Below are positions 3,114-50,004 of a DNA stretch of 64,000 nucleotides, piece by piece. How positions within the stretch are numbered: position 1 is the stretch's first letter; each line of letters opens with the position of its first letter. The DNA comes from Haliotis rufescens (Eukaryota), in NCBI RefSeq assembly GCF_023055435.1, contig NW_025964001.1:39804001-39868000 (forward strand). The letters run 5' to 3'. The position numbers and the translations under genes are program-made. The notes beneath the pieces were generated by a model that ran no database searches, was not told where the DNA came from, and saw only the letters and a program-made list of their open reading frames with translations.

Positions 3114-3515
3114 TGTGACGTGTCATTGTAATATGTAAAATTACTCGCTGTTTGTTGATCCTCGCGACATGACGGTCAACTTCCCTGATGTTCTGCGCAT
3201 GCCTAGTTTGTGTGTTTTAGTGCTGCCGTTTCCATGTTTTCGCCAGCGTGCTCGCAGATTTAGGCCTGTCAGTGGGCTAGACCAATATGTGTACTGATGG
3301 CGTAGATTGGTTGAAGTTCAGCCAACGAGTGGATCAGCGACAGGGATTGGTTGGTTGTATGGCCAGGTAATGCTGCAATTACAGTGATCCAAGGACGCGT
3401 CAAACCAGCGGTGAAGCGTTTAACAACTGATTCTACTTTCAAACGTCCTATCAGTGATTATTAGCCGCTCTTGACAACAAACACGGAGATTGCGATTATG
3501 TTATTATATAGGAAG

Positions 3516-3664
3516 GGTGAGTGAGTATGGTTTTACGCCGCTTTTAGCAATATTCCAGAGGAGGACACTAAATGGAGGAAATGGGCTAAACACATTGTAC
3601 CCATGTACCCGGGTCTTCGGCGTGATGAGCCAACGCTTTAACCTCAAGGCTACCCGACCGCCCC
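3516..3664 (-). mobile_element. SINE family A (tRNA-Asp/Val-like head)
   Basis: Matches 35168-35331; TSD ttattatat(a/g)ggaag at 3501-3515 / 3665-3679 (14/15). Confidence 0.9.
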
Positions 3665-4149
3665 TTATTATATGGGAAGATCACGAAGCGAAAATACGTT
3701 ATCACCAACTCGTTTGAAATATCTTTAAAAAAAGATCCATTAGATTTCTTTGCTCATGGTATAGTCGGAATGGTACAACCGACTCTACTTTTAGCAGATA
3801 TGTCTTATGAATATATAAAAAGTTTTGTCGGTATTTGTTTTCATTTATGAAGCTTATACAGAACAGTTATATGGTGTTACGGGGCAAGATTGCAAAATAC
3901 GAATAAACAAAGAAGTATACTTAACTGATAAACGATAATAATGAAATTATTGTTTAATCATTTATGCTGACGAAATCTTATTCAAACGATCACATTGTAT
4001 AATTCATTGCTTAGATACATTTAGATACGTCACGTGTTTTTTTAGGTTCATAATGTTTGACATGCGTTTTGTTTTCCCCCAATAAAATACATAATTGATG
4101 GCCACAAGACTCGTTATTCTGCTGAGTAAAATGGTGAGTTAAGTTTTAG

Positions 4150-4196
4150 TGTGATTAAATGTCGCGTCTAAGATTATTGCACTTTTAGAGTGCATT

Positions 4197-4239
<43 letters not shown>

Positions 4240-4462
4240 GGACTTATGCCGATATTATTGTGCTGGCTCACTGAAATACCACGCCGCAGTTTTAACAGAA
4301 TATCCCACTCGGACACAGTATACTGACTCTGGGCCGACCAGTCCTTGCCTGAGCTCCTTAATGCAATCTTTTAACGTCTTTTGATATGACGCGGCCGAGG
4401 ATCGAACCCCGGATCTTCCCTCTCCTGGCGGTCGCTCTACCACTAGACCACGGAGACGGTCG
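4150..4462 (-). mobile_element. SINE family D, older copy; left arm of the head-to-head pair
   Basis: tRNA-like head with boxes tggtctagtgg and ggttcgatcc, body gactggtcggcc..gtcagtatactgtg, (CA)n tract and shared 3' tail. Confidence 0.85.
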
Positions 4463-4467
4463 TTAGA

Positions 4468-4830
4468 GGTGAGGTGAGGTGAAATGGGGTTTAACGTCGC
4501 GTCCAAGATTATTGCACTTATATAGCGACGTGCATGTACGTGTGTGTGTGTGTGTTTGTGTGCCTGCTTGTACTAGTCCGGACTGATATCGATTTATAGT
4601 GCTAGCTCACTAAGATACCATGCCGCAGTTTAACATGAATACCCCACTCAGACACAGTATACTGACTCCGAGCCGACCAGTCCTTGCTTTAGCCCCTTAA
4701 TGCCGAGCGCCAGACAGGGTAACAACAAGTACTATCTTTTAACGTCTTTTAGTATGACGCGGTCGGGGATGGAACCCCGGACCTTCCGCTCTCCGGGCGG
4801 ACGCTCTACCACTAGACCACGGAGGCGGTC
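4468..4830 (-). mobile_element. SINE family D, full length (tRNA head, Meta/MESC-like domain, (CA)n, (cctca)n tail)
   Basis: TSD gacgg(t/c)cgttaga at 4455-4467 / 4831-4843; inserted at the 5' end of the previous D copy. Confidence 0.92.
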
Positions 4831-4957
4831 GACGGCCGTTAGAAATATGGAGACGCATAGGTTTAGCTGAACGACAGCGTATTTCCTTTATGATTATATT
4901 CGTTGATGACATACATATGTGCCACATGATGTTTATGAAGTATAACGTGTAACAATG

Positions 4958-5310
4958 AAGACCACATCCGTGGCATAAAGGATAGAGCGTCTTCCCGGAT
5001 AGAGGAAGATCGTGGTTCGAACCCCGGCCGCGCAATACGTTAGACTTGTAAAGATAATGCTTCAATTGTTGTTACCCTGCCTGGCGCTGGGCATTGAGGA
5101 GAAAAGACAAGGACTGATTGACTCGGAGTCAGCTTACTGTATCTAAGTGGGGTACCCATGTCAAACTGCGGCATGATATCTCGGTGGGCTGGTACTTTAA
5201 AACCGGCATGAGTCCGCACACACACGCGCACGCACACGCACACACACACGCACACGCACACACACACCATGCACACTTCTATAGAAGCGCTATAATCTTG
5301 AACAATTTAA
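4958..5310 (+). mobile_element. SINE family D, diverged variant; right arm of the head-to-head pair
   Basis: Variant head gtggcataaaggatagagcg, D body, (CA/CG)n tract and degraded tail. Confidence 0.85.
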
Positions 5311-6099: not shown

Positions 6100-7850
6100 A
6101 CATATTCAGAGTCTGTTGTTACATCGAAACCAACACTAAACTGAATATATCCAGAACATCTTGTTACATCGAACCCAGCCCTTCCTTGAACATAATCCGA
6201 ACAGTTTTCATCGAGACCAAATTTACATATATCAAGAACAGGATGTTACGCTCGGACCAACACTACACTGGACGTAACCAGAAAGTGTTACATCAAAACC
6301 AACACTACACTGGATATACCCAGTACATGTTACATCGAGACCAATACTACACTGGATATATCCAGAACATGTTACACCGAGACCAACACTACACTGGATA
6401 TACCCAGAACATGTTACACCGAGACCAACACTACACTGGATATATCCAGAACATGTTACATCGAGACCAACACTACACTGGATATACCCAGTACATGTTA
6501 CACCGAGACCAACACTACACTGGATATATCCAGAACATGTTACATCGAGACCAACACTACACTGGATATACCCAGAACATGTTACATCGAGACCAACACT
6601 ACACTGGATATACCCAGTACATGTTACACCGAGACCAACACTACACTGGATATACCCAGAACATGTTACACCGAGACCAACACTACACTGGATATATCCA
6701 GAACATGTTACATCGAGACCAACACTACACTGGATATATCCAGAACATGTTACATCGAGACCAACACTACACTGGATATATCCAGAACATGTTACATCGA
6801 GACCAACACTACACTGGATATATCCAGAACATGTTACATCGAGACCAACACTACACTGGATATACCCAGTACATGTTACATCGAGACCAATACTACACTG
6901 GATATACCCAGAACATGTTGAAACGAGGCCAACACTACACTGGATATATCCAGACAATGTTAAATCGAGACCAACACTACACTGGATATACCCAGAACAT
7001 GTTACATCGAGACCAACACTACACTGGATATATCCAGACAATGTTAAATCGAGCCCAACACTACACTGGATATATCCAGAACATGTTACACCGAGACCAA
7101 CACTACACTGGATCTACCCAGAACATGTTGAAACGAGGCCAACACTACACTGGATATATCCAGACAATGTTAAATCGAGACCAACACTACACGGGATATA
7201 TCCAGAATATATTGCACCAACACCAACACTACACTGGATATACCAAGAACATGTTACACCGAGACCAACACTACACTGGATATATCCAGAACATGTTACA
7301 TCGAGACCAACACTACACTGAATATATCCAGACAATGTTAAATCGAGCCCAACACTACACTGGATATATCCAGAACATGTTACATCGAGACCAACACTAC
7401 ACTGAATATACCCAGAACATGTTGAAACGAGGCCAACACTACACTGGATATATCCAGACAATGTTAAATCGAGACCAACACTACACGGGATATATCCAGA
7501 ATATATTGCACCAACACCAACACTACACTGGATATACCAAGAACATGTTACACCGAGACCAACACTACACTGGATATATCCAGAACATGTTAAATCGAGC
7601 CCAACACTACACTGAATATATCTAGAACATGATGTAACACCGAGCCCAACACTACACTGGATATACCAAGAACATGTTACATCGAGACCAACACTACACT
7701 GAATATATCAAGAACATGATGTAACACCGAGCCCAACACTACACTTGATATACCAAGAACATGTTACATCGAGACCAACACTACACTGGATATATCCAGA
7801 ACATGATGTAACACCGAGCCCAACACTACACTGGATATAGAGAGAACAAG
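6100..7850. repeat. Minisatellite, 42-bp unit, about 38 clear copies
   Basis: Unit gagaccaacactacactggatatatccagaacatgttacatc; explains ORF 6186..7625 (14-aa repeat). Confidence 0.97.
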
Positions 7851-8896: not shown

Positions 8897-9035
8897 NNNN
8901 NNNNNNNNNNNNNNNNNNNNNNNNNNNNNNNNNNNNNNNNNNNNNNNNNNNNNNNNNNNNNNNNNNNNNNNNNNNNNNNNNNNNNNNNNNNNNNNNNNNN
9001 NNNNNNNNNNNNNNNNNNNNNNNNNNNNNNNNNNN
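8897..9035. other. Assembly gap (139 N)
   Basis: Run of N directly abutting the 64-bp array. Confidence 1.
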
Positions 9036-10740
9036 GAACGATGTTGATATCAACATTTACAGGTAGGATATCCACAATGGGCAAGCTAATGACTACAGAG
9101 AGGTGTTAACATCAACATTTACACAGGTAGGATGTCCACACTGGGCAAGCTAATGACTACAGAGAGGTGTTCACATCAACATTTACACAGGTAGGATGTC
9201 CACACTGGGCAAGCTAATGACTACAGAGATGTGTTAACATCAACATTTACACAGGTAGGATATCCACAATGGGCAAGCTAATGACTACAGAGAGGTGTTA
9301 ACATCAACATTTACACAGGTAGGATGTCCACACTGGGCAAGCTAATGGCTACAGAGATGTGTTAACATCAACATTTACACAGGTAGGATGTCCACACTGG
9401 GCAAGCTAATGACTACAGAGATGTGTTAACATCAACATTTACACAGGTAGGATGTTCACACTGGGCAAGCTAATGGCTACAGAGAGGTGTTAACATCAAC
9501 ATTGACACAGGTAGGATGTCCACACTGGGCAAGCTAATGACTACAGAGAGGTGTTAACATCAACATTTACACAGGTAGGATGTCCACACTGGGCAAGCCA
9601 ATGGCTACAGAGAGGTGTTAACATCAACATTGACACAGGTAGGATGTCCACACTGGGCAAGCCAATGGCTACAGAGAGGTGTTAACATCAACATTTACAC
9701 AGGTAGGATGTCCACACTGGGCAAGCCAATGGCTACAGAGAGGTGTTAACATCAACATTTACACAGGTAGGATGTCCACACTGGGCAAGCCAATGGCTAC
9801 AGAGAGGTGTTAACATCAACATTTACACAGGTAGGATGTCCACACTGGGCAAGCCAATGGCTACAGAGAGGTGTTAACATCAACATTTACACAGGTAGGA
9901 TGTCCACACTGGGCAAGCCAATGGCTACAGAGAGGTGTTAACATCAACATTTACACAGGTAGGATGTCCACACTGGGCAAGCTAATGACTACAGAGAGGT
10001 GTTAACATCAACATTTACACAGGAAGGATGTCCACACTGGGCAAGCTAATGACTACAGAGATGTGTTAACATCAACATTTACACAGGTAGGATGTCCTCA
10101 CTGGGCAAGCTAATGACTACAGAGATGTGTTAACATCAACATTTACACAGGTAGGATGTCCACACTGTGCAAGCTAATGACTACAGAGATGTGATAACAT
10201 CAACATTTACACAGGTAGGATGTCCACACTGGGCAAGCTAATGACTACAGAGAGGTGTTAACATCAACATTTACAGGTAGGATGTCCACACTGGGCAAGC
10301 TAATGACTCCAGAGAGGTGTTAACATCAACATTTACACAGGTAGGATATCCACACTGGGCAAGCTAATGGCTACAGAGAGGTGTTAACATCAACATTTAC
10401 ACAGGTAGGATGTCCACACTGGGCAAGCTAATGACTACAGAGATGTGTTAACATCAACATTTACACAGGTAGGATGTCCACACTGGGCAAGCTAATGACT
10501 ACAGACATGTGTTAACATCAACATTTACACAGGTAGGATGTCCACACTGGGCAAGCTAATGACTACAGAGAGGTGTTAACATCAACATTTACAGGTAGGA
10601 TGTCCACACTGGGCAAGCTAATGACTACAGAGAGGTGTTCACATCAACATTTACACAGGTAGGATGTCCACACTGGGAAAGCCAAATACTACATGGAGGT
10701 GTTAACATCAACATTTACACATGTAGGATGTCCACACATC
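9036..10740. repeat. Minisatellite, 64-bp unit, about 26 copies
   Basis: Unit gtgttaacatcaacatttacacaggtaggatgtccacactgggcaagctaatgactacagagag. Confidence 0.98.
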
Positions 10741-11587: not shown

Positions 11588-12372
11588 GTGATGTGGGTAT
11601 ACGAGCACGGTGTAGGCAGATGTTTGATGTGGGTACACGAGCACGGTGTAGGCAGATGTTTGATGTGGGTATACGAGCACGGTGTAGGCAGATGTTTGAT
11701 GTGGGTACACGAGCACGGTGTAGGCAGATGTTTGATGCCTGTACACGCGGATGGTGGTGTCGGTTGTTTGATGCTAGTACACGAGCATGGTGTAGGCAAA
11801 TGTTTGATGCTAGTGCACGCGGATGGTGATGTCAGTTGTTTGATGCTAGTGCACGAGCATGGTGTAGGCAGATGTTTGATGCTAGTGCACGTGCATGGTG
11901 TAGGCAGATGTTTGATGCTAGTGCACGTGCATGGTGATGTCAGTTGTTTGATGTTAGTACACGAGCATGGTGTAGGCAAATGTTTGAATCTAGTGCACGC
12001 GGATGGTGATGTCAGTTGTTTGATGCTAGTCCACGAGCAGGGTGTTGTCACTTGTTTGATATTAGTGCACGTCCAGGTACTGTCAGTCGTTTGATGCATG
12101 TGCATTAGCAGGTGCTGTCACTTGTTTGATGTTAGTGCACGTCAAGGTGCTGTCACTTGTTTGATATTAGTGCACGTCAAGGTGCTGTCAGTTGTTTGAT
12201 TGTAGTGCACGTGCGGGGGCTGTCAGTTTTTTTATTGTAGTGCACGAGCGGGGTCTGTCAGTTGTTTGATTCTAGTGCACGAGCGGGGGCTGTCAGTTGT
12301 TTGATTCTAGTGCACGAGCAGGGTGTTGTCACATATTTGATTCTATTGCATGTGCAAGGGGCTGTCAGTTGC
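11588..12372. repeat. Minisatellite, 35-36-bp unit with a divergence gradient
   Basis: gatgtgggtatacgagcacggtgtaggcagatgttt drifting to gattctagtgcacgagcgggggctgtcagttgttt. Confidence 0.95.
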
Positions 12373-14949: not shown

Positions 14950-17490
14950 AAGATAGATAGATGATGGTAGGCGGAGTATGTGAAAAAAAGATGATGGTAG
15001 GCCGGGTATGTGAGATACAGATGGTGGTAGGCGGGGTATGTGAGATACAGATGAAGGTAGGCGGGGTATATGAGATACAGATGAAGGTAGGCGGTGTATG
15101 TGAGATACAGATGGTGGTAGGCAGGGTATATGAGATACAGATGATGGTAGGCGAGGTATGTGAGATACAGATAAAGGTAGGTGGAGAATGTGAGATACAG
15201 ATGATGGTAGGCAGGGTATATGAGATACAGATGAAGGTAGGTGGAGAATGTGAGATACAGATGAAGATCGGCGGGGTATGTGAGATACAGATAAAGGTAG
15301 GTGGAAAATGTGAGATACAGATGAAGGTCGGCGGGGTATGTGAGATACAGATAAAGGTAGGTGGAAAATGTGAGATACAGATGAAGGTAGGCGGGGTATG
15401 TGAGATACAGATGAAGGTAGGCAGGGTATATGAGATACAGATGATGGTAGGCGAGGTATGTGAGATACAGATAAAGGTAGGTGGAAAATGTGAGATACAG
15501 ATGAAGGTAGGCGGGGTATGTGAGATACAGATGGTGGCAGGCGGGGTATGTGAGATACAGGTGATGGTAGGCGGGGTATGTGAGATACAGATAAAGGTAG
15601 GTGGAGAATGTGAGATACAGATGAAGGTAGGTGGAGAATGTGAGATACAGGTGATGGTAGGCGGGGTATGTGAGATACAGATGAAGATCGGCGGGGTATA
15701 TGAGATACAGATGAAGGTAGGTGGAAAATGTGAGATACAGATGAAGGTAGGCGGGGTATGTGAGATACAGATAAAGGTAGGTGGAAAATGTGAGATACAG
15801 ATGAAGGTAGGCGGGGTATGTGAGATACAGATGGTGTTAGGCAGGGTATATGAGATACAGATGATGGTAGGCGGGGTATGTGAGATACAGATAAAGGTAG
15901 GTGGAGAATGTGAGATACAGATGAAGGTAGGTGGAGAATGTGAGATAAAGATGAAGGTCGGCGGGGTATGTGAGATACAGATGAAGGTCGGCGGAGAATG
16001 TGAGACACAGATAAATGTAGGCGAGGTATGTGAGATACAGATAAAGGTAGGTGGAGTATGTGAGATACAGATAAAGATAGGTGGAGTATGTGCGATACAG
16101 ACGAAGGTAGGTGGAGTATTGAGATACAGATGATGGTAGGCGGGGTATGTGAGATACAGATGAAGGTAGGCGGGGTATGTGAGATACAGATGATGGTAGG
16201 CGGGGTATCTGAGATACAGATGAAGGGGGGCGGTATATGTGAGATTCAGATGATGGTAGGCGGGGTATCTGAGATACAGATGAAGGTGGGAGGAGAATGT
16301 GAGATAAGGATGATGGTAGGAGGAGTATGTGAGATAGGGATGATGGTAGGCTGAGTATGTGAGATATAAATGATCGTAGGCGGGGTATGTGAGATACAGA
16401 GAGTTGTGGGCGTGGTATGTGAGATATAGATGATGGTAGACGGAGTATGTGAGATCCAGATGATGGTAAGCCTGGTATTTGAGATAAAGATGATGGTAGG
16501 CGGAGTATGTGAGATACAGATGGTGGTAGGCGTGGTATGTGAGATAATACGATGGTAGGCGGGGTATGTGGGATACAGATGGTGTGGGCGGAGTATGTGA
16601 GATACAGATGGTGGTAGGCGTGGAATGTGAGATGTAAAAGATGGTAGGCGGAGTATGTGAGATACAGATGAAGGTAGGCGGAGTATATGTGATACTGATG
16701 GCGGAGTATGTCAGATAGGGATGATGGTAGGCTGAGTATGTGAGATATAGATGGTAGTAGGCGGGGTATGTGAGATACAGATGGTGGTGGGTGGGGTATG
16801 TGAGATACAGATGGTGGTTGGTGGGGTATGTGAGATACAGATGGTGGTGGGCGGGGTATGTGAGATATAGATGGTGGTGGGCGGGGTATGTGAGATATAG
16901 ATGGTGGTGGGCGGGGTATGTGAGATACAGATGGTGGTGGGCGGAGTATGTGAGATATAGATGGTGGTAGGCGGGGTATGTGAGATAATACGATGGTAGG
17001 CGGGGTATGTGGGATACAGATGGTGTGGGCGGAGTATGTGAGATACAGATGGTGGTAGGCGTGGAATGTGAGATGTAAAAGATGGTAGGCGGAGTATGTG
17101 AGATACAGATGAAGGTAGGCGGAGTATATGTGATACTGATGGCGGAGTATGTCAGATAGGGATGATGGTAGGCTGAGTATGTGAGATATAGATGGTAGTA
17201 GGCGGGGTATGTGAGATACAGATGGTGGTGGGTGGGGTATGTGAGATACAGATGGTGGTTGGTGGGGTATGTGAGATACAGATGGTGGTGGGCGGGGTAT
17301 GTGAGATATAGATGGTGGTGGGCGGGGTATGTGAGATATAGATGGTGGTGGGCGGGGTATGTGAGATACAGATGGTGGTGGGCGGAGTATGTGAGATATA
17401 GATGGTGGTAGGCGGGGTATGTGAGATACAGATGGTGGTGGGCGGGGTATGTGGGATATAGATGATGGTAGGCGTGGTTTGTGAGATATG
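14950..17490. repeat. Minisatellite, 30-bp unit, about 85 copies, with a 441-bp higher-order duplication
   Basis: Unit gtgagatacagatgaaggtaggcggggtat; block about 16545-16985 repeated 441 bp downstream; explains ORFs in 14660-17509. Confidence 0.98.
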
Positions 17491-23164: not shown

Positions 23165-26135
23165 ATGAGGCAGTCCCCAGTAGAAGGCTTGTGTAGGTCG
23201 CCAGTAGCAGGCAGTGTCCAATAGAGGGCTTGTGTAGGTCGCCAATGTCAGGCAGTGTCCAGTAGAGGGCTTGTGTAGGTCGCCAGTGTCAGGCAGTGTC
23301 CAGTATAGGGCTTGTGTAGGTCGCCAATGTCACGCAGTGTCCAGTAGAGGGCTTGTGTAGGTCGCCAGTGTCAGGCAGTGTCCAGTATAGGGCTTGTGTA
23401 GGTCGCCAGTGTCACGCGGTGTCCAGTAGAGGGCTTGTGTAGGTCGCCAATGTCAGGCAGTGTCTAGTAGAGGGCTTGTGTAGGTCGCCAGTGTCACGCA
23501 GTGTCCAGTAGAGGGCTTGTGTAGGTCGCCAGTGTCACGCAGTGTCTAGTAGAGGGCTTGTGTAGGTCGCCAGTGTCAGGCAGTGTCCAGTAGAGGGCTT
23601 GTGTAGGTCGCCAGTGTCACGCAGTGTCTAGTAGAGGGCTTGTGTAGGTCGCCAATGTCACGCAGTGTCCAGTAGAGGGCTTGTGTAGGTCGCCAGTGTC
23701 AGGCAGTGTCCAGTAGAGGGCTTGTGTAGGTCGCCAGTGTCACGCAGTGTCTAGTAGAGGGCTTGTGTAGGTCGCCAGTGTCAGGCAGTGTCCAGTAGAG
23801 GGCTTGTGTAGGTCGCCAATGTCACGCAGTGTCCAGTAGAGGGCTTGTGTAGGTCGCCAGTGTCACGCAGTGTCCAGTAGAGGGCTTGTGTAGGTCGCCA
23901 GTGTCACGCAGTGTCTAGTAGAGGGCTTGTGTAGGTCGCCAGTGTCAGGCAGTGTCTAGTAGAGGGCTTGTGTAGGTCGCCAATGTCACGCAGTGTCCAG
24001 TAGAGGGCTTGTGTAGGTCGCCAGTGTCACGCAGTGTCCAGTAGAGGGCTTGTGTAGGTCGCCAGTGTCACGCAGTGTCCAGTAGAGGGCTTGTGTAGGT
24101 CGCCAGTGTCACGCAGTGTCTAGTAGAGGGCTTGTGTAGGTCGCCAATGTCACGCAGTGTCCAGTAGAGGGCTTGTGTAGGTCGCCAGTGTCAGGCAGTG
24201 TCTAGTAGAGGGCTTGTGTAGGTCGCCAGTGTCACGCAGTGTCCAGTAGAGGGCTTGTGTAGGTCGCCAGTGTCACGCAGTGTCTAGTAGAGGGCTTGTG
24301 TAGGTCGCCAATGTCACGCAGTGTCCAGTAGAGGGCTTGTGTAGGTCGCCAGTGTCACGCAGTGTCTAGTAGAGGGCTTGTGTAGGTCGCCAGTGTCACG
24401 CAGTGTCCAGTAGAGGGCTTGTGTAGGTCGCCAGTGTCACGCAGTGTCTAGTAGAGGGCTTGTGTAGGTCGCCAGTGTCACGCAGTGTCCAGTAGAGGGC
24501 TTGTGTAGATCGCCAGTGTCACGCAGTGTCCAGTAGAGGGCTTGTGTAGGTCGCCAGTGTCAGGCAGTGTCCAGTAGAGGGCTTGTGTAGGTCGCCAGTG
24601 TCAGGCAGTGTCCAGTATAGGAAGGTTGCAGAAGGTCGCCGATGTCACGCAGTGTCCAGTAGAAGGCTTGTGTAGGTCGCCAGTGTCAAGCAATGTCCAG
24701 TATAGGAAGGTTGCAGAAGGTCGCCAGTGTCACGCAGTGTCCAGTAGAGGGATTGTGTAGGTCGCAAGTGTCATGCAGTGTCCAGTATGGGAAGGTTAAT
24801 GTAGGTCGGCAGTGTCATGCAGTGTCCAGTATAGGAAGGTTGCAGAAGGTCGCCGATGTCACGCAGTGTCCAGTAGAAGGCTTGTGTAGGTCGCCAGTGT
24901 CAAGCAATGTCCAGTATAGGAAGGTTGCAGAAGGTCGCCAGTGTCAAGCAGTGTCCAGTAGAGGGCTTGTGTAGGTCGCCAGTGTCAAGCAATGTCCAGT
25001 ATAGGAAGGTTGCAGAAGGTCGCCAGTGTCAGGCAGTGTCCAGTATAGGAAGGTTGCAGAAGGTCGCCAGTGTCAAGCAGTGTCCAGTAGAGGGATTGTG
25101 TAGGTCGCCAGTGTCATGCAGTGTCCAGTATGGGAAGGTTAATGTAGGTCGCCAGTGTCATGCAGTGTCCAGTATAGGAAGGCTACAAAAGGTCGCCAGT
25201 GTCAGGCAGTGTCCAGTATGGGAAGGTTAATGTAGGTCGGCAGTGTCAGGCAGTGTCCAGTAGAGGAAGGTTACAAAAGGTCGCCAGTGTCAGGCAGTGT
25301 CCAGTATAGAAAGGCTACAGAAGGTCGCCAGTGTCAGGCAGTGTCCAGTATAGGAAGGCTACAAAAGGTCGCCAGTGTCAGGAAGTGTCCAGTATAGGAA
25401 GGCTACAAAAGGTCGCCAGTGTCAGGCAGTGTCCAGTATAGGAAGGCTACAAAAGGTCGCCAGTGTCAGGAAGTGTCCAGTATAGGAAGGCTACAAAAGG
25501 TCGCCAGTGTCAGGAAGTGTCCAGTATAGGAAGGCTATAAAAGGTCGCCAGTGTCATGCAGTGTCCAGTATAGGAAGGCTACAAAAGGTCGCCAGTGTCA
25601 GGCAGTGTCCAGTATGGGAAGGTTAATGTAGGTCGGCAGTGTCAGGAAGTGTCCAGTAGAGGAAGGCTACAAAAGGTCGCCAGTGTCAGGCAGTGTCCAG
25701 TATAGGAAGGCTACAAAAGGTCGCCAGTGTCATGCAGTGTCCAGTATAGGAAGGCTACAAAAGGTCGCCAGTGTCAGGAAGTGTCCAGTATAGGAAGGCT
25801 ACAAAAGGTCGCCAGTGTCATGCAGTGTCCAGTATAGGAAGGCTACAAAAGGTCGCCAGTGTCAGGCAGTGTCCAGTATAGGAAGGCTACAAAAGGTCGC
25901 CAGTGTCATGCAGTGTCCAGTATAGGAAGGCTACAAAAGGTCGCCAGTGTCAGGCAGTGTCCAGTATAGGAAGGCTACAAAAGGTCGCCAGTGTCAGGAA
26001 GTGTCCAGTATAGGAAGGCTACAAAAGGTCGCCAGTGTCAGGAAGTGTCCAGTATAGGAAGGCTACAAAAGGTCGCCAGTGTCAGGCAGTGTCCAGTAGA
26101 GGAAGGCTACAAAAGGTCGGCAGTGTCAGGCAGTG
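23165..26135. repeat. Compound minisatellite: 41-bp unit (to about 24600), mixed zone, 44-bp unit (from about 25260)
   Basis: gtgtaggtcgccagtgtcacgcagtgtccagtagagggctt and aaggtcgccagtgtcaggcagtgtccagtataggaaggctacaa. Confidence 0.98.
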
Positions 26136-31169: not shown

Positions 31170-31437
31170 GTTTGTTTGTTTATTCATTGTTTAACGCTGC
31201 ACTCAGCAATATTCCAACTATATGACGGCGGTCTGTAAAAAATCAAGACTGGACTAGACAATCCAGTGATTGACATCATGAGCATCGATCTGCGCAATTT
31301 GGATACGATGATATGCATCAACCAAGTCAGCGAGCCTGACCACCCGATCCCGTTAGTCGCCTTTTACGACAAACATAGTCGCCTTTTACGGCAACCATGG
31401 GTTGCTGAAGACCTATTCTACCCCGGATCTTTACGGG
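31170..31437 (-). mobile_element. Family C, full length
   Basis: Reverse complement of the C consensus, with duplicated hairpin module; further C fragments at about 31615-31770 and 31870-31935. Confidence 0.92.
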
Positions 31438-35167: not shown

Positions 35168-35331
35168 TGAGTGAGTGAGTATGGTTTTACGCCGCTTTTA
35201 GCAATATTCCAGCAATATCACGGCGGGGGACACCAGAAATGGGCTTCACACATTGTACCCATGTCGGGAATCGAACCCGGGTCTTCGGCGTGACGAGCGA
35301 ACGCTTTAACCACTAGGCTACCCGACCGCCC
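35168..35331 (-). mobile_element. SINE family A, full-length young copy
   Basis: Perfect 16-bp TSD ctcaaaagacgttaag at 35152-35167 / 35332-35347; box A tagcctagtgg, box B ggttcgattcc; (actc)n tail. Confidence 0.96.
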
Positions 35332-35384
35332 CTCAAAAGACGTTAAGGGCCATCCGATTCTTTCACATTATTATAGTTAAGCAA

Positions 35385-35640
35385 CGCGTGAAGATCCGGG
35401 GTAGAATAGGTCTTCAGCAACCAATGCTTGCCGTAAAAGGCGACTATGCTTGTCGTAAGAGGCGACTTACCTGATCGGGTGGTCAGGCTCGTTGAGTGAT
35501 ACATGTCATCGCATCCCAATTCCGTAGATCGATGCTCATGATATCAATCACTGGATTGTCTGTTCCAGACTCGATTATTTACAGACCGCCGTCATATAGC
35601 TGGAATATTGCTGAGTGCGGCGTCAAACAACAAACAAACA
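35385..35640 (+). mobile_element. Family C, full length
   Basis: gtgaagatccggggtagaataggtcttcagcaacc...gctgagtgcggcgtcaaac(aaac)n. Confidence 0.93.
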
Positions 35641-35665
35641 GACATACATTTATACAATATTGTCG

Positions 35666-35970
35666 GGTGAGGCGGAATGGGGTTTAAAGTCGCATTGAAG
35701 CTTATTGCACTTATACGCATGCGCATGTGTGTGTGTGGCTGCTTGTACTAGTCCGGACAAATACCGATTTATAGTGCTAGCCCACTGAGATACCATGCCT
35801 CCGTTTAACATGAATACCCCACTCAGAGACAGTATTGTGACTCCGAGCTGACCAGTCCTTGTTTTAGCCCCTAATGCCGAGCGCCAGACAGAATAACAAC
35901 CATTGAGTACTATATTTTTTAAGGCTCTATCCGGACAGACGCTCTATCCTTTATGACACAGAGGTGGTCT
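35666..35970 (-). mobile_element. SINE family D with variant head; arm of the second head-to-head pair
   Basis: D tail and body; head cataaaggatagagcg as in 4958-5310; box B region deleted. Confidence 0.87.
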
Positions 35971-36062
35971 TCATTGTTACACGTTATACTTCATAAACAT
36001 CATGTGGCACATATGTATGTCATCAACGAATATAATAATAAAGCAAAGCGCTCCATATACTA

Positions 36063-36183
36063 ACGAGCGTCTCCGTGGTCTAGTGGTAGAGCGTCTGCCC
36101 GGAGAGCGATACGGAAGGGCCGGGGTTCGATCTCGTGTCATACCAAAATACGTTAAAAGGAGGAAATGTTTTTACCCTGCCTA
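36063..36183 (+). mobile_element. SINE family D, head only; other arm of the second pair
   Basis: cgtctccgtggtctagtggtagagcg...ggggttcgatc...taccctgcct. Confidence 0.85.
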
Positions 36184-37269
36184 ACAATATGAAAGAATCG
36201 TGTCCTTAACTTCTTTTAAGTAGTATATCATGAAAACTTACAACCAAGCCCATCGTCTGGTCACGCCATCTACTACACAGGTTTTTCCCATGGAACCAGA
36301 TCCTAATATGACAACGGAGTCTTTTATGCGACTCTTAAAGAGTGTTATATGAACTAAACTGTGTTGTAACGACCTTTTGATTCGAGGGTGATCTGATTCT
36401 GGATGGAAATGAGCTTCCTGGCGAAATAGCCTGCTATCCCATATTGTTTTCCACCAGCTTATACATCATCCTCAACCTCCATGTCACAACTGCCAGAGCG
36501 CGGGAGGCGGATCTCGCCGCCAGTCCGTCAAGCCGTAGTCTTAATTATAACCGACTGGTCACCAAAGCATCAAAGTTCTTTTCGTTTTTTTCAGCTCTTT
36601 GTTTTAGGAACCAGAGAGGATTTCAGTGCAAGAACCATTTCCCTTTTCTTTGAATCTACAAATAGACGTCAAAGCAATTGTTTCACAAATACATTTAAAG
36701 GCACAAGAGCCGGTACTGTGTTATGGAATACATGCGGTCACCGCTCCCTGACAAGACATAGGATCGGCTAAAACTGAGGACATTTCGTATATAAATACTT
36801 ATATCAAATAAAGACACATGATTACATTCACAATAATGAGATGACTGGGGTTTCCTTTTATAAAGAGACGGTTTTTGATGACTAGGATAGAATGATACTT
36901 ACGTACACAAGAAGATGTGAGTGGTTCTTGTGTAGTTTAAATACCGCGTCTACAAAAAAAGTGATGATGACCCCAGATGTCACCACTGACTGTGACTAGG
37001 CACAGGGTGCTATTTCTACGCTTCAAGGGTATTCTCTACACTTTACGTTAGTTAAAACATGTGTCAAATCTAAATCTGGGCTAGTCCAATTACGTGTTCC
37101 CTGGGAGTCTTACATCAAAGAATCAACTCAATGCCTTGTCATTAAAAAAGCTTTGTTGTTGCAGAATCCTGGCAATAACCGCATGGATTGCTGATTGACA
37201 GAACATCTTCACGTGGATCGTGACGTCATCACAGGAAGATGACCATCGGCTTGTATCGATCCCTGTCAC

Positions 37270-39572
37270 ATGGTGTGTTGTGTATGTGAGATATCGCTCT
37301 TGCCTAAGTGCTTGATTACAAAGGTAGGCTTAATCCAGGTAGGCATGCGTCTTTGATTATGCTTGCAATTTAAGCACGGCCTTTCATCGTCACCGTGTAT
37401 ATCGTTGTCGACATTGATACGGAGGCTGTAGCACATGTCAACGACTCAAATACGGAAGTGACGTATAATGGTTATAACGTTATCATAAAATGTTGTTTAT
37501 AGCCTGTTGTTTATGAAGTTGGGGCACACAAAGATATTAAAGTTACTGCCAGAGCTTGCGAATAATACTTGTCAGATTAATCTTAGAATATTCGTGATTA
37601 GTTACGAAGAAATTTTAAACCATACGTAATATACTTATTTTTTTGTTATGGGATATTCAGAATTAGGTTCACAGAACCACAGAACGGTAAAACAGAACAT
37701 GCTTAACCTTTTCGCGAGCACCTGGTATCATCACAAATTTTCAGTTATCCATTCACCGCTATTTTGCCTTTTACGCTCAATGGAATCTGTTACGGATAAT
37801 CGAGACTAATTATTTCTGGCGTTGGCGTTTTATATTTTACATGGAATTTTCAAGGTAATGTACTTAACACCCGCCAATGACCTGTGTTATTTGCATATGA
37901 TTATTAGGATAGGACTTAGAACACTAATAATGCGTTTGATTCATAAAACATTGCTGTAAACATTGCGTGGTGAATCGTATATGACTTGACCCACATTGTT
38001 GGTGAGTTTTTTTTGTTTTTTTTTTAACGCCGCTCTCAGTAATATTCCAGCTATATGACGGCGGTCTGTAAATAATCGAGTCTGGACCAGACAATCCAGT
38101 GATTGACATCATGAGCATCGATCCACGCAATTGGGATCGATGACATGCATCAACCTGATCAGCGAGCCTGACCACCCGATCCTGTTAGTCGCCTCTTACA
38201 AGTATAGTCGCCTCTAACGACAAGCATGGGTTGCTGAAGACCTATTCTACCCCGGATCTACACGGGTCTGTTGGTGAGTAGTGACATTTAGGAATACATA
38301 TATTACAAGTGATTCCATTGGTAACAAGTATTTTGTTTTGTCGTTTGTTTCCATAAACTTATATATATAGGCTTGTCCATAAGCGGTCTCCTGTTTCCTG
38401 ATTGGCTGACCCCAGAGTGGGCGGGGCTGTGTTCTCTTATTTCGCCGAACGATGGCGCTGATTTCGTATCATTATGATAATCATTACTGATCATTGTGTT
38501 AATCATTAAATAAGTCTGTGAGGTTGATATTGTTGACTTATTCATTTTAAGAAGTGACGTCAGTGGATAGTACTATTGAATAATGTTTGTTGCAGGCTGT
38601 TGTTGGTTGTGTACTCGTAAGTATCTTTATATTAGCGCAATAACCTTGAACGATGTTATAGCGTAAACACGTCAAGTGTATACTGTATGGGTTCCTGCGT
38701 GAGTGAGTGAGTGAGTGAGTGAGTGAGTATGGTTCTACGCAGCTTTTAGAAATATTCCAGCAATATCACAGCGGGGGACACCAAAATGAGCTTCACACAT
38801 TGTACCCATGTGGGGAATCGAACCCGGGTTATCGGAGTGACGATCAAACGCATTAACCACTAGGCTACTCTACCCCACTTTATACTGTACGGGGCACGGG
38901 TGGCCCCGTTGTCTTTGACACTGCAAGTCACTGTGCAGAGTTCCCACATAATATTCGTCTAATAGCGACACATATTGTTCGAAGGTCAAGGAATTGACAA
39001 GGTTTATCTGGATGTTTAAGCAAGGATAAAGATCCGACCCACAGGGATCCAGGGACAGAATAAGTCGTCAGTATACCCGTTAAAAACGTGGAACGCTGCT
39101 CATACTATCATACTATCAAGCACCCCCCCCCCCCATGAACTCCCTTCAACCCATCTTCGAATAAAACGAAGTCGAATATAACGATATAACGAATGTGACT
39201 TAGTTCAAATCAATATGTGGGCGGTCGGATAGCCTAGTGGTTACAGCGTTCGCTCGTCACGTCGAAGACCCGGGTTCGATTCCCCACTTGAGTACAATGT
39301 GTGAAGCCCATTTCTGGTGTCCTACGCCGTGATGTTGCTGGAATATTACTAAAAGCGGCGTAAAACCGTACTCACTCAGTCAAATTAGTACGGATGATGA
39401 AATTTAATCAAAACCAGTTAATTAAATGACCTTGGGTTCTCAATCCTGTTTTTTCTTATTCTAGGGACAGTACATTTGTGAATTATCTCGCATCGTAAAA
39501 TTTGGGGTTGGAACATTATGGCAAGAAGTAGGCATCCCCCATGCGCACCAATTGTACTGCCGTCCTTGTTGA
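37270..39572 (+). CDS. Hypothetical 3-exon 60-aa Cys-rich peptide (37270-37323, 38596-38616, 39465-39572)
   Basis: Consensus-like splice sites picked by eye, all phase 0; no homology recognised; may be chance. Confidence 0.15.
38008..38268 (-). mobile_element. Family C, full length
   Basis: TSD tgttggtgagt at 37997-38007 / 38269-38279. Confidence 0.94.
38699..38878 (-). mobile_element. SINE family A
   Basis: Full-length match to 35168-35331 with a longer (gagt)n tail; a B head fragment follows at about 38890-38945. Confidence 0.9.
39218..39378 (+). mobile_element. SINE family A
   Basis: Full-length match; inverted relative to the copy at 38699-38878. Confidence 0.92.
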
Positions 39573-40956
39573 TATGTGACGTTACACATTCGAGTCAGGA
39601 TTTCTGCTCGGTTTGGCAAATTGAAAAAAAAACAACCGAAAAGGCTCCTGTGACCTCTTCTTACCCGGAATCCCCACAGCGAACGTTGACTTGGGTTCAG
39701 AAGGGTGTCAAATGAAATAGTTTTTGTTATTCAATCGTGTCTCTTAATGACACTAACCTCAACTCTAGAAGAGTACATTAACTCCCGTCGTGTGGTTTGT
39801 GTTCCTTTTAAATGATCTCTTTTATATTTGGAACGTTGTTCCTGGTGCCATAACTGTCTTGGATGATGGAAAATAAAGCGTACAGAGTAGCATATAAACT
39901 GTCGGGTACAAGAAAGCACACACTTGAAGTTCACAGTTCACTCTGCTCATTATTGTGTATTGTGAAACTGCGACACCCATCTCTCTCTCTCCCCCCCCCC
40001 ATGTCTCTTGAGACGCGTCACGTGCACTTGACCTGTTGTAGAACACTCTTCGATGCATGTACAATCGCCTAGATACCCGTATCTTTTAACATCGAATAAC
40101 CATTTATTGTTTGTTTCATTTTTAGCCATCATCAAATCTGGTGTATACTTTCTTTTGCTCGTCAGTATAGTAACGGGTATTGCGTAGTTATAAAATGTAC
40201 CAAGTCACACCTTGAGTATATTGGAAGGCCATGGGCGTCTAGCCATTATGTTGGGTGGACGACCGATTGGTTGATTGAATGAGTGAGTGAGCTAGCTCTA
40301 GTGTGAATGAATGAGAGATTTATTGATTGAGTGAATGAGTGAGCGCTAGTGCGAATGAGTGAGCGACCGATTGAATGATTGAATGAATGAGTGATTTAGC
40401 TCTGGTGTGAGTGAGTGAGCGATCGATCGATTGATTGATTGAATGAATGAGTGATTTAGCTCAAGCGTGAATGAGTGAGCTATCGATTGATTAAATGAGT
40501 GAGTTAGCGCTAGTGTGAATGAGTGAATGATCGATTAAATGAATGTGTTAGTGGTATTGAGTGAGTGATCGATTAAATGAATGTGTTAGTGCTAGTGTGA
40601 TTGAGTGAGTGATCGATTGAGTTAATTAGTGAGTGCTAGTGTGAATGAGTGAACGATCGATTGATTGATTGAATATGTGAATGCTAGTGTGAATGAGTGA
40701 ACGATCGAATGATTGAGTAAATGTATTAGTGATAGTGTGAATGAGTTAGTGATTGATTGAGTAAATGTGTTAGTGCTGGTGTGAATGGGTGAGTGATTGA
40801 TTGAGTGAATGTGTTAGTGCTAGTGTGAATGAGTGATTGAGTAAATGTGTTAGTGCTGGTGTGAATGAGTGAGTGATTGAGTAAATGTGTTTGTGCTGGT
40901 GTGAATGAGTGATTGATTGAGTAAATGTGTTAAAGCTGGTGTGAATTGGTGAGTGA

Positions 40957-41314
40957 GGTGAGGTGAGGTGAAATTGGGTTTAACGTCGCGTCCAAGATTA
41001 TTGCACTTATATAGCGACGTGCATGCACGTGTATGTGTGTGTGTGGCTGCTTGTACTAGTCCGGACTGATGCCGATTTATAGTGCTAGCTCACTGAGATA
41101 CCATGCCGCAGTTTAACATGAATACCCCACTCAGACACAGTATACTGACTCCGAGCCCACCAGTCCTTGTTTTACCCCCTTAATGCCGAGCGCCAGACAG
41201 GGTAACAACAAGTACAATCTTTTTAACGTCTTTTTGTATGACGCGGCCCGGGATCGAACCCTGGACCTTCCGCTCTCCGGGCGGACGCTCTACCACAAGA
41301 CCACGGAGGCGGTC
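40957..41314 (-). mobile_element. SINE family D, full length, inside the minisatellite
   Basis: TSD gaattggtgagtga at 40943-40956 / 41315-41328. Confidence 0.95.
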
Positions 41315-42267
41315 GAATTGGTGAGTGATTGATTGATTGAGTAAATGTATTAGTGCTAGTGTGAATGAGTTAGTGATTGATTGAGTAAATGTGTAAGTGC
41401 TGGTGTGAATGAGTGAGTGATTGAGTAAATGTGTTAGTGCTGGTGTGAATGAGTGATTGAGTAAATGTGTTAGTGCTGGTGTGAATGGGTGAATGAGTGA
41501 TTGAATTAATGTGTTAGTGCTGGTGTGAATGGGTGAGTGATTGATTGATTGAGTAAATGTATGAAATGTTAGTGCTGGTGTGAATGAGTGATTGAGTAAA
41601 TGTGTTAGTGCTGGTGTGAATGAGTGATTGATTGAGTAAATGTGTTAGTGCTGGTGTGAATGAGTGATTGATTGAGTAAATGTGTTAGTGCTGGTTTGAA
41701 TGGGTGAGTGATTGATTGATTGAGTAAATGTATTAGTGCTAGTGTGAATGAGTTAGTGATTGATTGAGTAAATGTGTTAGTGCTGGTGTGAATGAGTGAT
41801 TGATTGAGTAAATGTGTTAGTGCTGGTGTGAATGAGTGATTGAGTAAATGTGTTAGTGCTGGTGTGAATGGGTGATTGAGTAAATGTGTTAGTGCTGGTG
41901 TGAATGAGTGATTGAGTAAATGTGTTAGTGCTGGTGTGAATGAGTGATTGAATAAATGTGTTAGTGCTGGTGTGAATGGGTGAGTGATTGATTGAGTGAA
42001 TGTGTTAGTGCTAGTGTGAATGAGTGATTGAGTAAATGTGTTAGTGCTGGTGTGAATGAGTGAGTGATTGAGTAAATGTGTTTGTGCTGGTGTGAATGAG
42101 TGAGTGATTGATTGAGTGAATGTGTTAGTGCTAGTGTGAATGAGTGAGTGAGTAAATGTGTTAGTGCTGGTGTGAATGAGTGAGTGATTGAGTAAATGTG
42201 TTTGTGCTGGTGTGAATGAGTGATTGATTGAGTAAATGTGTTAAAGCTGGTGTGAATTGGTGAGTGA

Positions 42268-42625
42268 GGTGAGGTGAGGTGAAATTGGGTTTAACGTCGC
42301 GTCCAAGATTATTGCACTTATATAGCGACGTGCATGCACGTGTATGTGTGTGTGTGGCTGCTTGTACTAGTCCGTACTGATGCCGATTTATAGTGCTAGC
42401 TCACTGAGATACCATGCCGCAGTTTAACATGAATACCCCACTCAGACACAGTATACTGACTCCGAGCCCACCAGTCCTTGTTTTACCCCCTTAATGCCGA
42501 GCGCCAGACAGGGTAACAACAAGTACAATCTTTTTAACGTCTTTTTGTATGACGCGGCCCGGGATCGAACCCTGGACCTTCCGCTCTCCGGGCGGACGCT
42601 CTACCACAAGACCACGGAGGCGGTC
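42268..42625 (-). mobile_element. SINE family D, duplicate of 40957-41314
   Basis: Same TSD and flanks, offset 1311 bp; one difference seen (ccggact vs ccgtact). Confidence 0.95.
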
Positions 42626-49826: not shown

Positions 49827-49990
49827 AGGGTCGGTCGGGTAGCCTCGTGGTTAAAGCGTTCGCTCGTCACGCCGAAGACCCGGGTCCGATTCCCATATGG
49901 GTACAATGTTGTGAAGCCCATTTCTGGTATCCCCCGCCGTGATTATGCTGGAATATTGAGAAAAGTGACGTAAAACCATACTCACTCACT
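49827..49990 (+). mobile_element. SINE family A between two related arrays
   Basis: Full-length match to the A consensus. Confidence 0.92.
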
Positions 49991-50004
49991 ATTCCCCAGC
50001 ACGG

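What the first reader, a model, noticed from the sequence alone, without database searches (positions are those of the whole stretch)
4150..5310. Head-to-head SINE pair with a spacer core identical at a second locus 31 kb away
Seen: two family D SINEs point away from each other across a ~115-bp spacer, and the same arrangement occurs inverted at 35666-36183. The 73 bp at 4893-4965 are the exact reverse complement of 35964-36036, while the corresponding heads and bodies differ by eye by roughly 10-20% plus indels. At 10% divergence, 73 consecutive identities have probability 0.9^73, about 5e-4. Both loci use the same unusual head variant (cataaaggatagagcg) on the same side. Inference: head-spacer-head is a unit that spreads or is homogenised on its own. 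It could be a composite mobile element, a bidirectional Pol III upstream element under constraint, or a cassette moved by recombination or conversion using SINE arms as homology.
Basis: partly seen in the sequence, partly recalled or inferred. Interest (0 to 1): 0.8.

Follow-up and report, generated by a model that had tools for sequence, protein, structure and literature searches.

The report
One-off SINE-flanked patch copied nearby
A roughly 260-base piece of abalone DNA (two SINE heads and the unique DNA between them) was copied once to a site 31 kb away, and its central 73 bases were probably re-matched later by gene conversion; it is an ordinary local rearrangement, not a new mobile element.

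Summary
The 73-mer match is exact, but the spacer occurs only twice in the 1.33-Gb genome, both times in this window. It is therefore not a repeat family.

Much of the identity contrast comes from comparing parts that are not counterparts:
- At locus 1, the "left SINE" next to the spacer (4467-4830) is a young nested insertion with a 12-bp target-site duplication. The true old partner is 4133-4461.
- At locus 2, the right-hand body (35924-35662) is a different, younger Haliotis MESC SINE copy. It shares almost no private changes with the locus-1 body.

The shared tract is about 260 bp: roughly 120 nt of the left SINE, the spacer, and 45 nt of the rare head variant. Locus 1 keeps both original flanks, so it is the donor. 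At locus 2 the tract is fused to a 5'-truncated SINE, and a 7-bp direct repeat brackets the whole.

Independent reads confirm locus 2, and two related taxa carry it too.

Within the tract, the non-73-mer sites differ by about 11% while the 73-mer differs by 0 (P about 4e-4). A second, younger layer is therefore real. It is most likely a short gene-conversion patch; constraint or chance are less likely.

Interest is low.

The parts
4133..4461 (-). Locus 1, SINE #1: an old Haliotis MESC-type SINE. The tail is at the low coordinate, the internal (GT)n runs about 4199-4238, and the tRNA-like head is at about 4370-4461. This is the true ancestral left arm. Its first ~120 nt (sense numbering) are the source of the locus-2 left arm.
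   Evidence: BLAST to family copies gives 76%. The alignment with SINE #2 excised is. Its private head changes are unique in the genome.
4467..4830 (-). Locus 1, SINE #2: a young full-length MESC SINE nested at the 5' end of SINE #1. It is absent from locus 2 and is not part of the shared unit.
   Evidence: It is 95-97% identical to 40 scored genome copies, out of 5927 first-look candidates. Its target-site duplication lies at 4455-4466 and 4831-4842.
4455..4466 (.). Left copy of the 12-bp target-site duplication of SINE #2 (GACGGTCGTTAG). The right copy is at 4831-4842 (GACGGCCGTTAG).
   Evidence: The usual family duplication is 11-14 bp.
4843..4959 (.). Locus 1 unique spacer. Together with 4462-4466 it makes about 122 bp before the SINE #2 insertion. 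It contains a 25-nt stretch (about 4856-4880) that is absent at locus 2.
   Evidence: It occurs only twice in the genome.
4893..4965 (+). The 73-mer that is identical at both loci. It is 33% GC with 2 CpG. It consists of 67 nt of spacer plus the first 6 nt of the right SINE head.
4960..5303 (+). Locus 1, right SINE (loc1R): an old MESC SINE. The rare head variant is at 4960-5004, and the body runs on coherently from it. It is the donor of the variant head.
   Evidence: Its best genome matches are only 78-80%. About 20% of comparable sites differ from the family majority.
36184..36190 (-). Candidate 5' target-site duplication ATATTGT, abutting the locus-2 composite. Its partner is at 35654-35660.
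   Evidence: In random position pairs from the window, a match of 7 or more occurs with empirical P = 0.008. It is shorter than the family norm of 11-14 bp.
36065..36183 (+). Locus 2, left arm (loc2L): the first ~120 nt of a MESC SINE, lacking its body and tail. It is sense on the + strand and so points away from the spacer. It is read as a copy of SINE #1's 5' part: 89% identical, with 2 indels.
   Evidence: A 3' truncation is not what normal SINE insertion produces.
35970..36064 (-). Locus 2 spacer copy (95 nt). It overlaps the 73-mer at 35964-36036.
   Evidence: An independent-sample contig covers 35872-36094 with 0 differences.
35925..35969 (-). Locus 2 copy of the rare head variant, first 45 nt only. 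It ends at ...GGATAGAG, and the B-box region is missing.
   Evidence: Five derived states are shared with locus 1, against 3 private ones.
35662..35924 (-). Locus 2 right-hand body and tail: a separate, younger, 5'-truncated MESC SINE of the 'TAATT' sub-type. It starts near SINE position 88 and has a complete 3' tail. It is not a copy of the locus-1 body.
   Evidence: It is 92% identical to many genome copies. Family alignments all end at 35666. Only 6 derived states are shared with the locus-1 body, against 65 private ones (Fisher P = 9e-4 versus the head). The CAAT-type insertion is a subfamily trait with 282 copies.

Best explanation
Locus 1 is the original.

Two old Haliotis MESC SINEs happened to insert head to head around about 122 bp of unique DNA. 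A young SINE later nested at the junction.

Once, before three related abalone taxa split, about 260 bp of this locus was copied in inverted orientation to a site 31 kb away. The copied piece comprised the first ~120 nt of the left SINE, the spacer, and the first 45 nt of the right SINE's rare head.

At the new site it is fused, out of register, to the 5' end of a 5'-truncated, unrelated MESC SINE. The whole 522-bp composite is bracketed by a 7-bp direct repeat.

Inferred mechanism of the copy: during insertion of that SINE, or during repair of the break made for it, DNA synthesis switched template by microhomology to the nearby locus 1 (its DNA or a local transcript). It then returned to the target site.

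The two copies then diverged by about 11%. Later, a short non-allelic gene-conversion tract of at most 73 bp re-matched the centre of the spacer. That gives the perfect 73-mer.

Nothing here spreads. The unit is a two-copy local duplicate.

What is shown: the copy number, the donor and recipient polarity, the chimeric make-up, the nested insertion, and the two-layer identity. What is inferred: the template-switch mechanism and the conversion event.
For: Copy number:
- Only two copies exist genome-wide.

Chimeric structure and polarity:
- No collinear homology lies outside 4370-5004 versus 36183-35925.
- SINE #2 is a young nested insertion with a 12-bp target-site duplication.
- The locus-2 body is 92% identical to many copies, while the locus-1 body is at most 80% identical to anything.
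- Polarised sites: the head has 5 shared-derived and 3 private states; the body has 6 shared and 65 private (P = 9e-4).
- At locus 1 both SINEs continue coherently beyond the tract. At locus 2 neither does. Locus 1 is therefore the donor.

Mode of insertion:
- A 7-bp direct repeat abuts both ends of the locus-2 composite (empirical P = 0.008).
- The locus-2-lineage changes in the tract (about 8.5%) are similar to the body's distance from the family majority (about 10%). This fits arrival together.
- Two copies lying 31 kb apart in 1.33 Gb (chance about 5e-5) points to a local template.

Reality and age of locus 2:
- Contigs from an independent sample of the same organism match 35872-36094 and 36080-37100 with 0 differences.
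- Organisms B and C, 2.4-3% diverged in the unique flank, also carry the composite.

Second layer:
- There are 17 substitutions in 153 aligned sites outside the 73-mer (non-CpG sites 10.7%, CpG sites 12.9%) and none inside it (P = 4e-4).
Against: - The direct repeat is only 7 bp, against the usual 11-14 bp for this family. It was also sought after the fact.
- The left arms share only 1 derived state. It cannot be proved that loc2L is copied from SINE #1 rather than being an independent fragment.
- SINE #1 now lacks about 34 bp that loc2L retains, so a later deletion at locus 1 is required.
- Gene conversion between 260-bp repeats that were about 90% identical is expected to be inefficient.
- The 73-mer also seems unchanged in taxa B and C. 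The difference table was truncated, so this is uncertain. If true, it would fit constraint slightly better than a single old conversion.
- The pattern was chosen for follow-up because of the long run, so the P values are optimistic.
Confidence: 0.55

Rival explanations
1. Purifying selection keeps the 73-bp core unchanged in both copies. It would then be, for example, a cis-regulatory module or an unrecognised small RNA, and there was no conversion event.
For: - There are 0 differences in 73 bp against about 11% in the rest of the tract, with sharp edges.
- No differences were listed inside the 73-mer for the related taxa B and C (that table was truncated).
- The core contains E-box-like motifs (CATATG, CACATG, ACGTG). 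This was seen by eye only.
Against: - Neither strand folds better than shuffled controls (z = -0.6 and +0.25).
- There is no Rfam hit.
- No small-RNA reads fall on it.
- No splice signals sit at its edges, and stop codons lie in five of six frames.
- A freshly pasted second copy next to a decapitated SINE would have to be constrained as strongly as the original.
- Only two copies exist, and no homologue is known elsewhere.
Confidence: 0.13
2. There was a single copy event and nothing more. The substitution-free 73 bp is a chance gap in randomly placed changes, noticed only because the scan looks for long identical runs.
For: - If all tract sites are pooled, the probability of a run of 73 or more is 0.009-0.024. 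That is not extreme for a scan of many windows.
- The ascertainment bias is real.
Against: When the 73-mer is compared with the rest of the tract, P is about 4e-4 even with CpG sites set aside. Mismatches are dense right at both edges, with 5 in the adjoining 19 nt.
Confidence: 0.15
3. Locus 2 already had its own head-to-head SINE pair, and a conversion event used both SINE heads as homology arms to paste in the locus-1 spacer.
For: - The left arms share only 1 derived state, and SINE #1's private head changes are absent from loc2L.
- The first 34 nt of the left heads are nearly identical, as in any two family members.
Against: - loc2L is a 3'-truncated fragment, which normal SINE insertion does not produce.
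- The right junction is out of register by about 43 nt rather than homologous.
- The 7-bp repeat bracketing the whole composite would be a coincidence (P = 0.008).
- Even the minimal pasted tract is heterogeneous: 6 substitutions in 47 nt against 0 in 73.
Confidence: 0.07
4. Head-spacer-head is a composite mobile element or repeat family that spreads as a unit.
For: The same arrangement occurs twice in one window.
Against: - The genome holds exactly two copies of the spacer, of the 73-mer, and of a 36-nt core searched with up to 3 mismatches.
- The two 'units' do not share their outer parts.
Confidence: 0.02
5. An assembly or polishing artefact created one of the two copies.
For: The region is extremely repeat-rich, with many minisatellite arrays.
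Against: - Contigs from an independent sample reproduce locus 2 with its locus-specific flanks at 0 differences.
- Two other taxa carry it as well.
- One contig of organism C matches 35925-36036 with exactly 5 differences and no gaps. That equals the number of differences between the two loci over that span, so it is inferred to be the locus-1 version.
Confidence: 0.02

Closest known systems
Haliotis MESC SINEs (Matetovici et al. 2016, PMC4758252)
   Same: The features match the published description: a tRNA-derived head, an expanding internal (CA)n microsatellite, a terminal (CACCT)n repeat, and target-site duplications. All four SINE pieces at the two loci belong to this family.
   Different: Nothing new about the family itself. 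The rare head variant GCATAAAGGATAGAGCG occurs in only 3 exact copies. The window copies were not aligned to the published consensus.
Chimeric retrocopies made by LINE reverse-transcriptase template switching (for example U6/L1 chimeras, PMC4476161; tripartite chimeras in Magnaporthe, PMC2104539; L1 recombination with diverse RNAs, bioRxiv 10.1101/2025.02.02.635956)
   Same: The 3' part is a retroelement with an intact 3' end. Foreign sequence is fused to its truncated 5' end with no homology at the junction. One direct repeat brackets the whole.
   Different: Here the foreign part comes from only 31 kb away, which RNA-level chimeras do not predict. It is non-genic DNA containing an antisense SINE. 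The direct repeat is short, at 7 bp. No transcript of the donor has been shown.
Chimeric L1 insertions and local rearrangements in which the nascent cDNA or broken target invades a nearby genomic repeat (Gilbert et al. 2002 and Symer et al. 2002, Cell 110; cited from my own knowledge, not read here). Also microhomology-mediated template switching (FoSTeS/MMBIR) producing short inverted templated insertions.
   Same: A nearby, inverted template; a short copied tract; microhomology-type junctions; association with a retroelement insertion site.
   Different: No deletion or inversion of the intervening 31 kb can be shown. The mechanism is inferred from structure alone.
Non-allelic (interlocus) gene conversion between nearby inverted paralogues
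   Same: A short patch of perfect identity with sharp edges sits inside older, roughly 11% diverged paralogous sequence. The copies lie close together on one chromosome.
   Different: The homologous tract is only about 260 bp and was about 90% identical, which makes it a poor substrate. Concerted evolution across species has not been demonstrated.

Membership tests
Haliotis MESC SINE family | tRNA-derived head with A and B promoter boxes | tested here: inconclusive
   The head of SINE #2 gives a sub-threshold Rfam tRNA hit (24.7 bits against a gathering score of 29). ARAGORN calls no tRNA. Box-like motifs (TAGTGGTAGAGCG, GGTTCGATCC) are visible in the alignment.
Haliotis MESC SINE family | Internal (CA)n microsatellite and terminal (CACCT)n repeat | tested here: met
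   Both are seen in the window copies and in 29 or more genome copies. This matches the description in PMC4758252.
Haliotis MESC SINE family | MESC central domain matching the published consensus | not tested
Composite or compound mobile element family | Many copies with the same internal structure at unrelated loci | tested here: not met
   Exactly two copies of the spacer exist in 1.33 Gb.
Segmental (simple local) duplication | Homology continues into unique flanking DNA on both sides | tested here: not met
   Homology stops at 36183 and at about 35925. No collinear matches exist between the two neighbourhoods.
Inversion-breakpoint duplication (staggered-break model) | Each copy keeps only one of the original flanks | tested here: not met
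   Locus 1 keeps both original continuations: the body of SINE #1 on the left and the old body of loc1R on the right. Locus 2 keeps neither.
Template-switch chimeric retrocopy | 3' module is a retroelement with an intact 3' end, and a foreign 5' module is fused to its truncated 5' end | tested here: met
   Family alignments run to the tail end at 35666. The junction ...GGATAGAG|CCTTAAAA... skips about 43 nt of SINE.
Template-switch chimeric retrocopy | One target-site duplication brackets the whole chimera | tested here: inconclusive
   ATATTGT abuts both ends (P = 0.008). It is shorter than the family's usual 11-14 bp.
Template-switch chimeric retrocopy | The 5' module derives from an expressed RNA | not tested
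   No RNA run holding the region was found. The only RNA data laid were small-RNA reads on locus 2.
Interlocus gene-conversion tract | A patch significantly more similar than the surrounding paralogous sequence | tested here: met
   0 of 73 sites differ inside the patch, against 17 of 153 outside it. P = 4e-4 using non-CpG sites only.
Interlocus gene-conversion tract | Paralogues within a species share changes that orthologues lack (concerted evolution) | not testable with these tools
   Only locus 2 could be laid on reads of other taxa, and the difference table was truncated.

The most novel reading that the evidence does not exclude
The 73-bp core is kept identical for a reason tied to its position. 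It would be the loop between two inverted SINE heads. Such hairpin-prone inverted SINE pairs might break preferentially in the loop and be repaired from the paralogue, giving loop-directed recurrent conversion. Alternatively, the core might be a small functional element conserved in both copies and across abalone species.
Probability: 0.12. Interest if true: 0.5.

Novelty: new member of a known kind. Interest (0 to 1): 0.2.

Why it matters
It matters mainly as a caution. In SINE-dense genomes, nested insertions and chimeric copies make unrelated SINE parts look like the "diverged arms" of a unit. That inflates the apparent contrast with a shared spacer.

What remains is a small, datable example in an abalone of a templated 260-bp patch copied from a nearby locus at a SINE insertion site, followed by a probable short conversion tract. 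It is useful for anyone studying SINE-associated repair or concerted evolution in molluscs, but it is not a new kind of element.

Tried and rejected
- Composite repeat family. Rejected by three genome-wide searches.
- Simple 5' transduction, meaning a read-through transcript of locus 1 retroposed whole. Rejected because the locus-2 body is not the locus-1 body.
- CpG decay as the cause of faster divergence in the SINE-derived parts. Rejected: non-CpG sites differ by 10.7% and CpG sites by 12.9%.
- The shared 'CAAT' insertion as proof that the right bodies are paralogous. Rejected: it is a subfamily trait with 282 copies against 3 in the control.
- SINE #1's head changes as subfamily markers. 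Not so: that combination is unique in the genome, so the changes cannot be timed.
- A larger eroded inverted duplication. No collinear hits were found.
- Staggered-break inversion. Rejected on flank logic, because locus 1 keeps both original flanks.
- Structured RNA, tRNA or an Rfam family in the spacer. Nothing was found.
- Coding exon. Stops lie in five of six frames, no splice signals sit at the edges, and the long ORFs in the window have no Pfam hit.
- The third copy of the head variant (C9, L005). It is an ordinary SINE with unrelated upstream DNA.
- Earlier notes of the scan. There were none for this place.

Not done:
- A family majority state was computed inside a script for polarising changes. 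It was not printed.

Full report
**1. Observation**

Window 4893-4965 is the exact reverse complement of 35964-36036. The run cannot be extended by a single base on either side.

Both loci have SINE heads pointing away from each other. Both carry the odd A-box region CATAAAGGATAGAGCG on the same side.

**2. What the SINEs are**

The elements have four features:
- a tRNA-like head
- an internal (CA)n tract
- a 3' tail ending in (CACCT)n
- target-site duplications of mostly 11-14 bp

This is the published description of Haliotis MESC SINEs (PMC4758252). The family is abundant, with 5927 first-look candidates for one copy.

**3. Copy number**

Three genome-wide searches each find exactly two places in the 1.33-Gb assembly:
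- the 73-mer
- the 133-bp spacer at a loose E-value
- a 36-nt core with up to 3 mismatches

Both places are in this window. The unit is not a repeat family.

The head variant is rare. Its 19-mer occurs three times: at the two loci and in one ordinary SINE on contig C9 whose upstream DNA is unrelated. One-mismatch matches to the 16-mer are at control level.

**4. Anatomy of locus 1**

The SINE that touches the spacer on the left (4467-4830) is 95-97% identical to many genome copies. It is flanked by GACGGTCGTTAG (4455-4466) and GACGGCCGTTAG (4831-4842). It is a young insertion nested at the 5' end of an older SINE (4133-4461), and locus 2 lacks it.

Removing it restores the ancestral locus: old SINE #1 (minus strand), about 122 bp of unique DNA, then old SINE loc1R (4960-5303, plus strand).

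**5. Anatomy of locus 2 (read on the minus strand)**

| Coordinates | Content |
|---|---|
| 36190-36184 | ATATTGT |
| 36183-36065 | first ~120 nt of a SINE in antisense, with no body or tail |
| 36064-35970 | spacer |
| 35969-35925 | first 45 nt of the variant head |
| 35924-35662 | SINE body and complete tail, starting near SINE position 88 |
| 35660-35654 | ATATTGT again |

**6. The right-hand bodies are not counterparts**

- The locus-2 body is 92% identical to dozens of genome copies. All family alignments end at its tail.
- The locus-1 right SINE has no relative closer than 78-80%.

I polarised changes against the majority state of 71 family copies. The majority was computed in a script and not printed.
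- Variant head: 5 shared-derived states against 3 private ones.
- Body: 6 shared against 65 private (Fisher P = 9e-4).

The one eye-catching shared feature in the body is a CAAT-type insertion. It is a subfamily trait with 282 copies, against 3 in the control.

**7. Polarity**

At locus 1 both SINEs continue coherently beyond the shared tract. The heavily diverged variant head (about 25% from the family) belongs with the equally old locus-1 body, not with the roughly 10% diverged locus-2 body. At locus 2 neither side continues.

Locus 1 is the donor and locus 2 the recipient. This also rules out a staggered-break inversion, which would leave each copy with only one original flank.

No other collinear homology links the two neighbourhoods.

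**8. How the copy was made (inferred)**

Points that fit a chimeric insertion made at the moment the younger SINE integrated:
- The foreign 260 bp sits on the 5' end of a 5'-truncated SINE.
- The junction is out of register.
- A 7-bp repeat abuts both ends of the 522-bp composite. Random position pairs in the window give a match of 7 or more in 0.8% of trials.
- Locus-2-lineage change in the tract (about 8.5%) is similar to the body's distance from the family majority (about 10%).

Chimeras made by LINE reverse-transcriptase template switching are well known (PMC4476161, PMC2104539, bioRxiv 10.1101/2025.02.02.635956).

However, a donor only 31 kb away in 1.33 Gb (chance about 5e-5) argues for a local template. 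I therefore favour a switch by the nascent strand, or by the broken target, to the nearby locus by microhomology. The 7-bp repeat is shorter than the family's usual 11-14 bp, and I looked for it after the fact.

Whether the left arm at locus 2 is copied from SINE #1 cannot be proved. The two arms are 89% identical but share only one derived state. SINE #1's private changes are unique in the genome and cannot be timed. SINE #1 has also since lost about 34 bp that locus 2 retains.

**9. Reality and age**

Contigs from an independent sample of the same organism (X2) match 35872-36094 and 36080-37100 without a single difference.

Organisms B and C differ by 3.0% and 2.4% in the unique flank, and both also carry the composite.

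One contig of organism C matches 35925-36036 with exactly 5 differences and no gaps. That is the number of differences between the two loci over that span, so I infer it is the locus-1 version.

At 36044, organisms B and C have the locus-1 state. That difference therefore arose recently in organism A.

The copy predates the split of these taxa.

**10. The identity contrast after correction**

Identity within the truly shared tract:

| Segment | Identity |
|---|---|
| Left arm | 89% |
| Left part of spacer | 91%, plus a 25-nt indel and two 1-nt indels |
| 73-mer | 100% |
| Variant head | 87% |

Outside the 73-mer there are 17 substitutions in 153 aligned sites. Non-CpG sites differ by 10.7% and CpG sites by 12.9%, so CpG decay is not the cause. 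The chance of no change at the 69 non-CpG sites of the 73-mer is 4e-4.

Pooling all tract sites gives P = 0.009-0.024 for such a run.

A second, younger layer of identity therefore exists. The most economical reading is a short non-allelic gene-conversion tract between the two nearby inverted copies.

The alternatives are constraint on the core, or chance sharpened by the way the finding was selected. Against constraint:
- no fold better than shuffles
- no Rfam or tRNA hit
- no small-RNA reads on the spacer in a miRNA-seq run
- no exon features

In favour of constraint, no difference inside the core was listed for taxa B and C. That table was truncated, so this is weak.

**11. Verdict**

The head-spacer-head "unit" is a two-copy local duplicate with a chimeric origin and a probable conversion patch. 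It is not a mobile or self-homogenising element and shows no sign of being a Pol III control region. It is a new example of known processes.

**12. Limits**

- No further genome loci could be fetched.
- Concerted evolution across species could not be tested.
- The N run at 8897-9035 was left alone.

Noticed in passing
window 6117-7839, 9042-10737, 11601-12371, 14959-17488, 23168-26102, 41321-44826, 46998-49820, 50006-52001, 54909-55948, 61701-63942 and others: The window is packed with at least a dozen unrelated minisatellite arrays, with periods of 22-92 bp and lengths up to 3.5 kb. The long ORFs that run through them have no Pfam hit. This looks like a recombination-prone, gene-poor region.
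   Followed up: partly
window 40955-41316 and 42266-42627: Two MESC SINE copies lie 1311 bp apart inside the 40-44-bp array. They are 93.5% and 93.2% identical to SINE #2 and nearly the same as each other. The SINE seems to have been duplicated along with array units.
   Followed up: no
G000:C557:2231236-2231387, 2243546-2243697, 2255856-2256007 (L079, L078, L077): Three equally scoring MESC SINE hits lie exactly 12,310 bp apart. This suggests a tandem repeat of about 12.3 kb that contains the SINE.
   Followed up: no
L019-L047 (genome copies of the young MESC subfamily): Target-site duplications are mostly 11-14 bp. Many begin with C, CT or CCT, so they overlap the (CACCT)n tail. This hints at microhomology between the tail and the target at priming.
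   Followed up: partly
L069 (G000:C1:57565657-57565819): A 5'-truncated MESC SINE has the duplication ATAGTACTCAAT, which mimics the SINE's own internal ATAGTACTT. This is an example of microhomology at the 5' junction of a truncated insertion.
   Followed up: no
window 3511-3665, 35171-35333, 38719-38883, 39219-39378, 49827-49995 and others: A second, unrelated tRNA-headed SINE family (head GGGGCGGTCGGGTAGCCTAGTGGTTAAAGCG...) and a further repeat (305-553, 31187-31432, 35391-35634, 38016-38257) are interleaved with the MESC copies.
   Followed up: no
L005 (G000:C9:241015-241033): This is the third genomic copy of the rare head variant GCATAAAGGATAGAGCGTCT, in an otherwise ordinary old MESC SINE. 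A very small old sub-lineage may have carried this A-box change.
   Followed up: partly
window 8897-9035: A run of 139 N (gap or masked).
   Followed up: no
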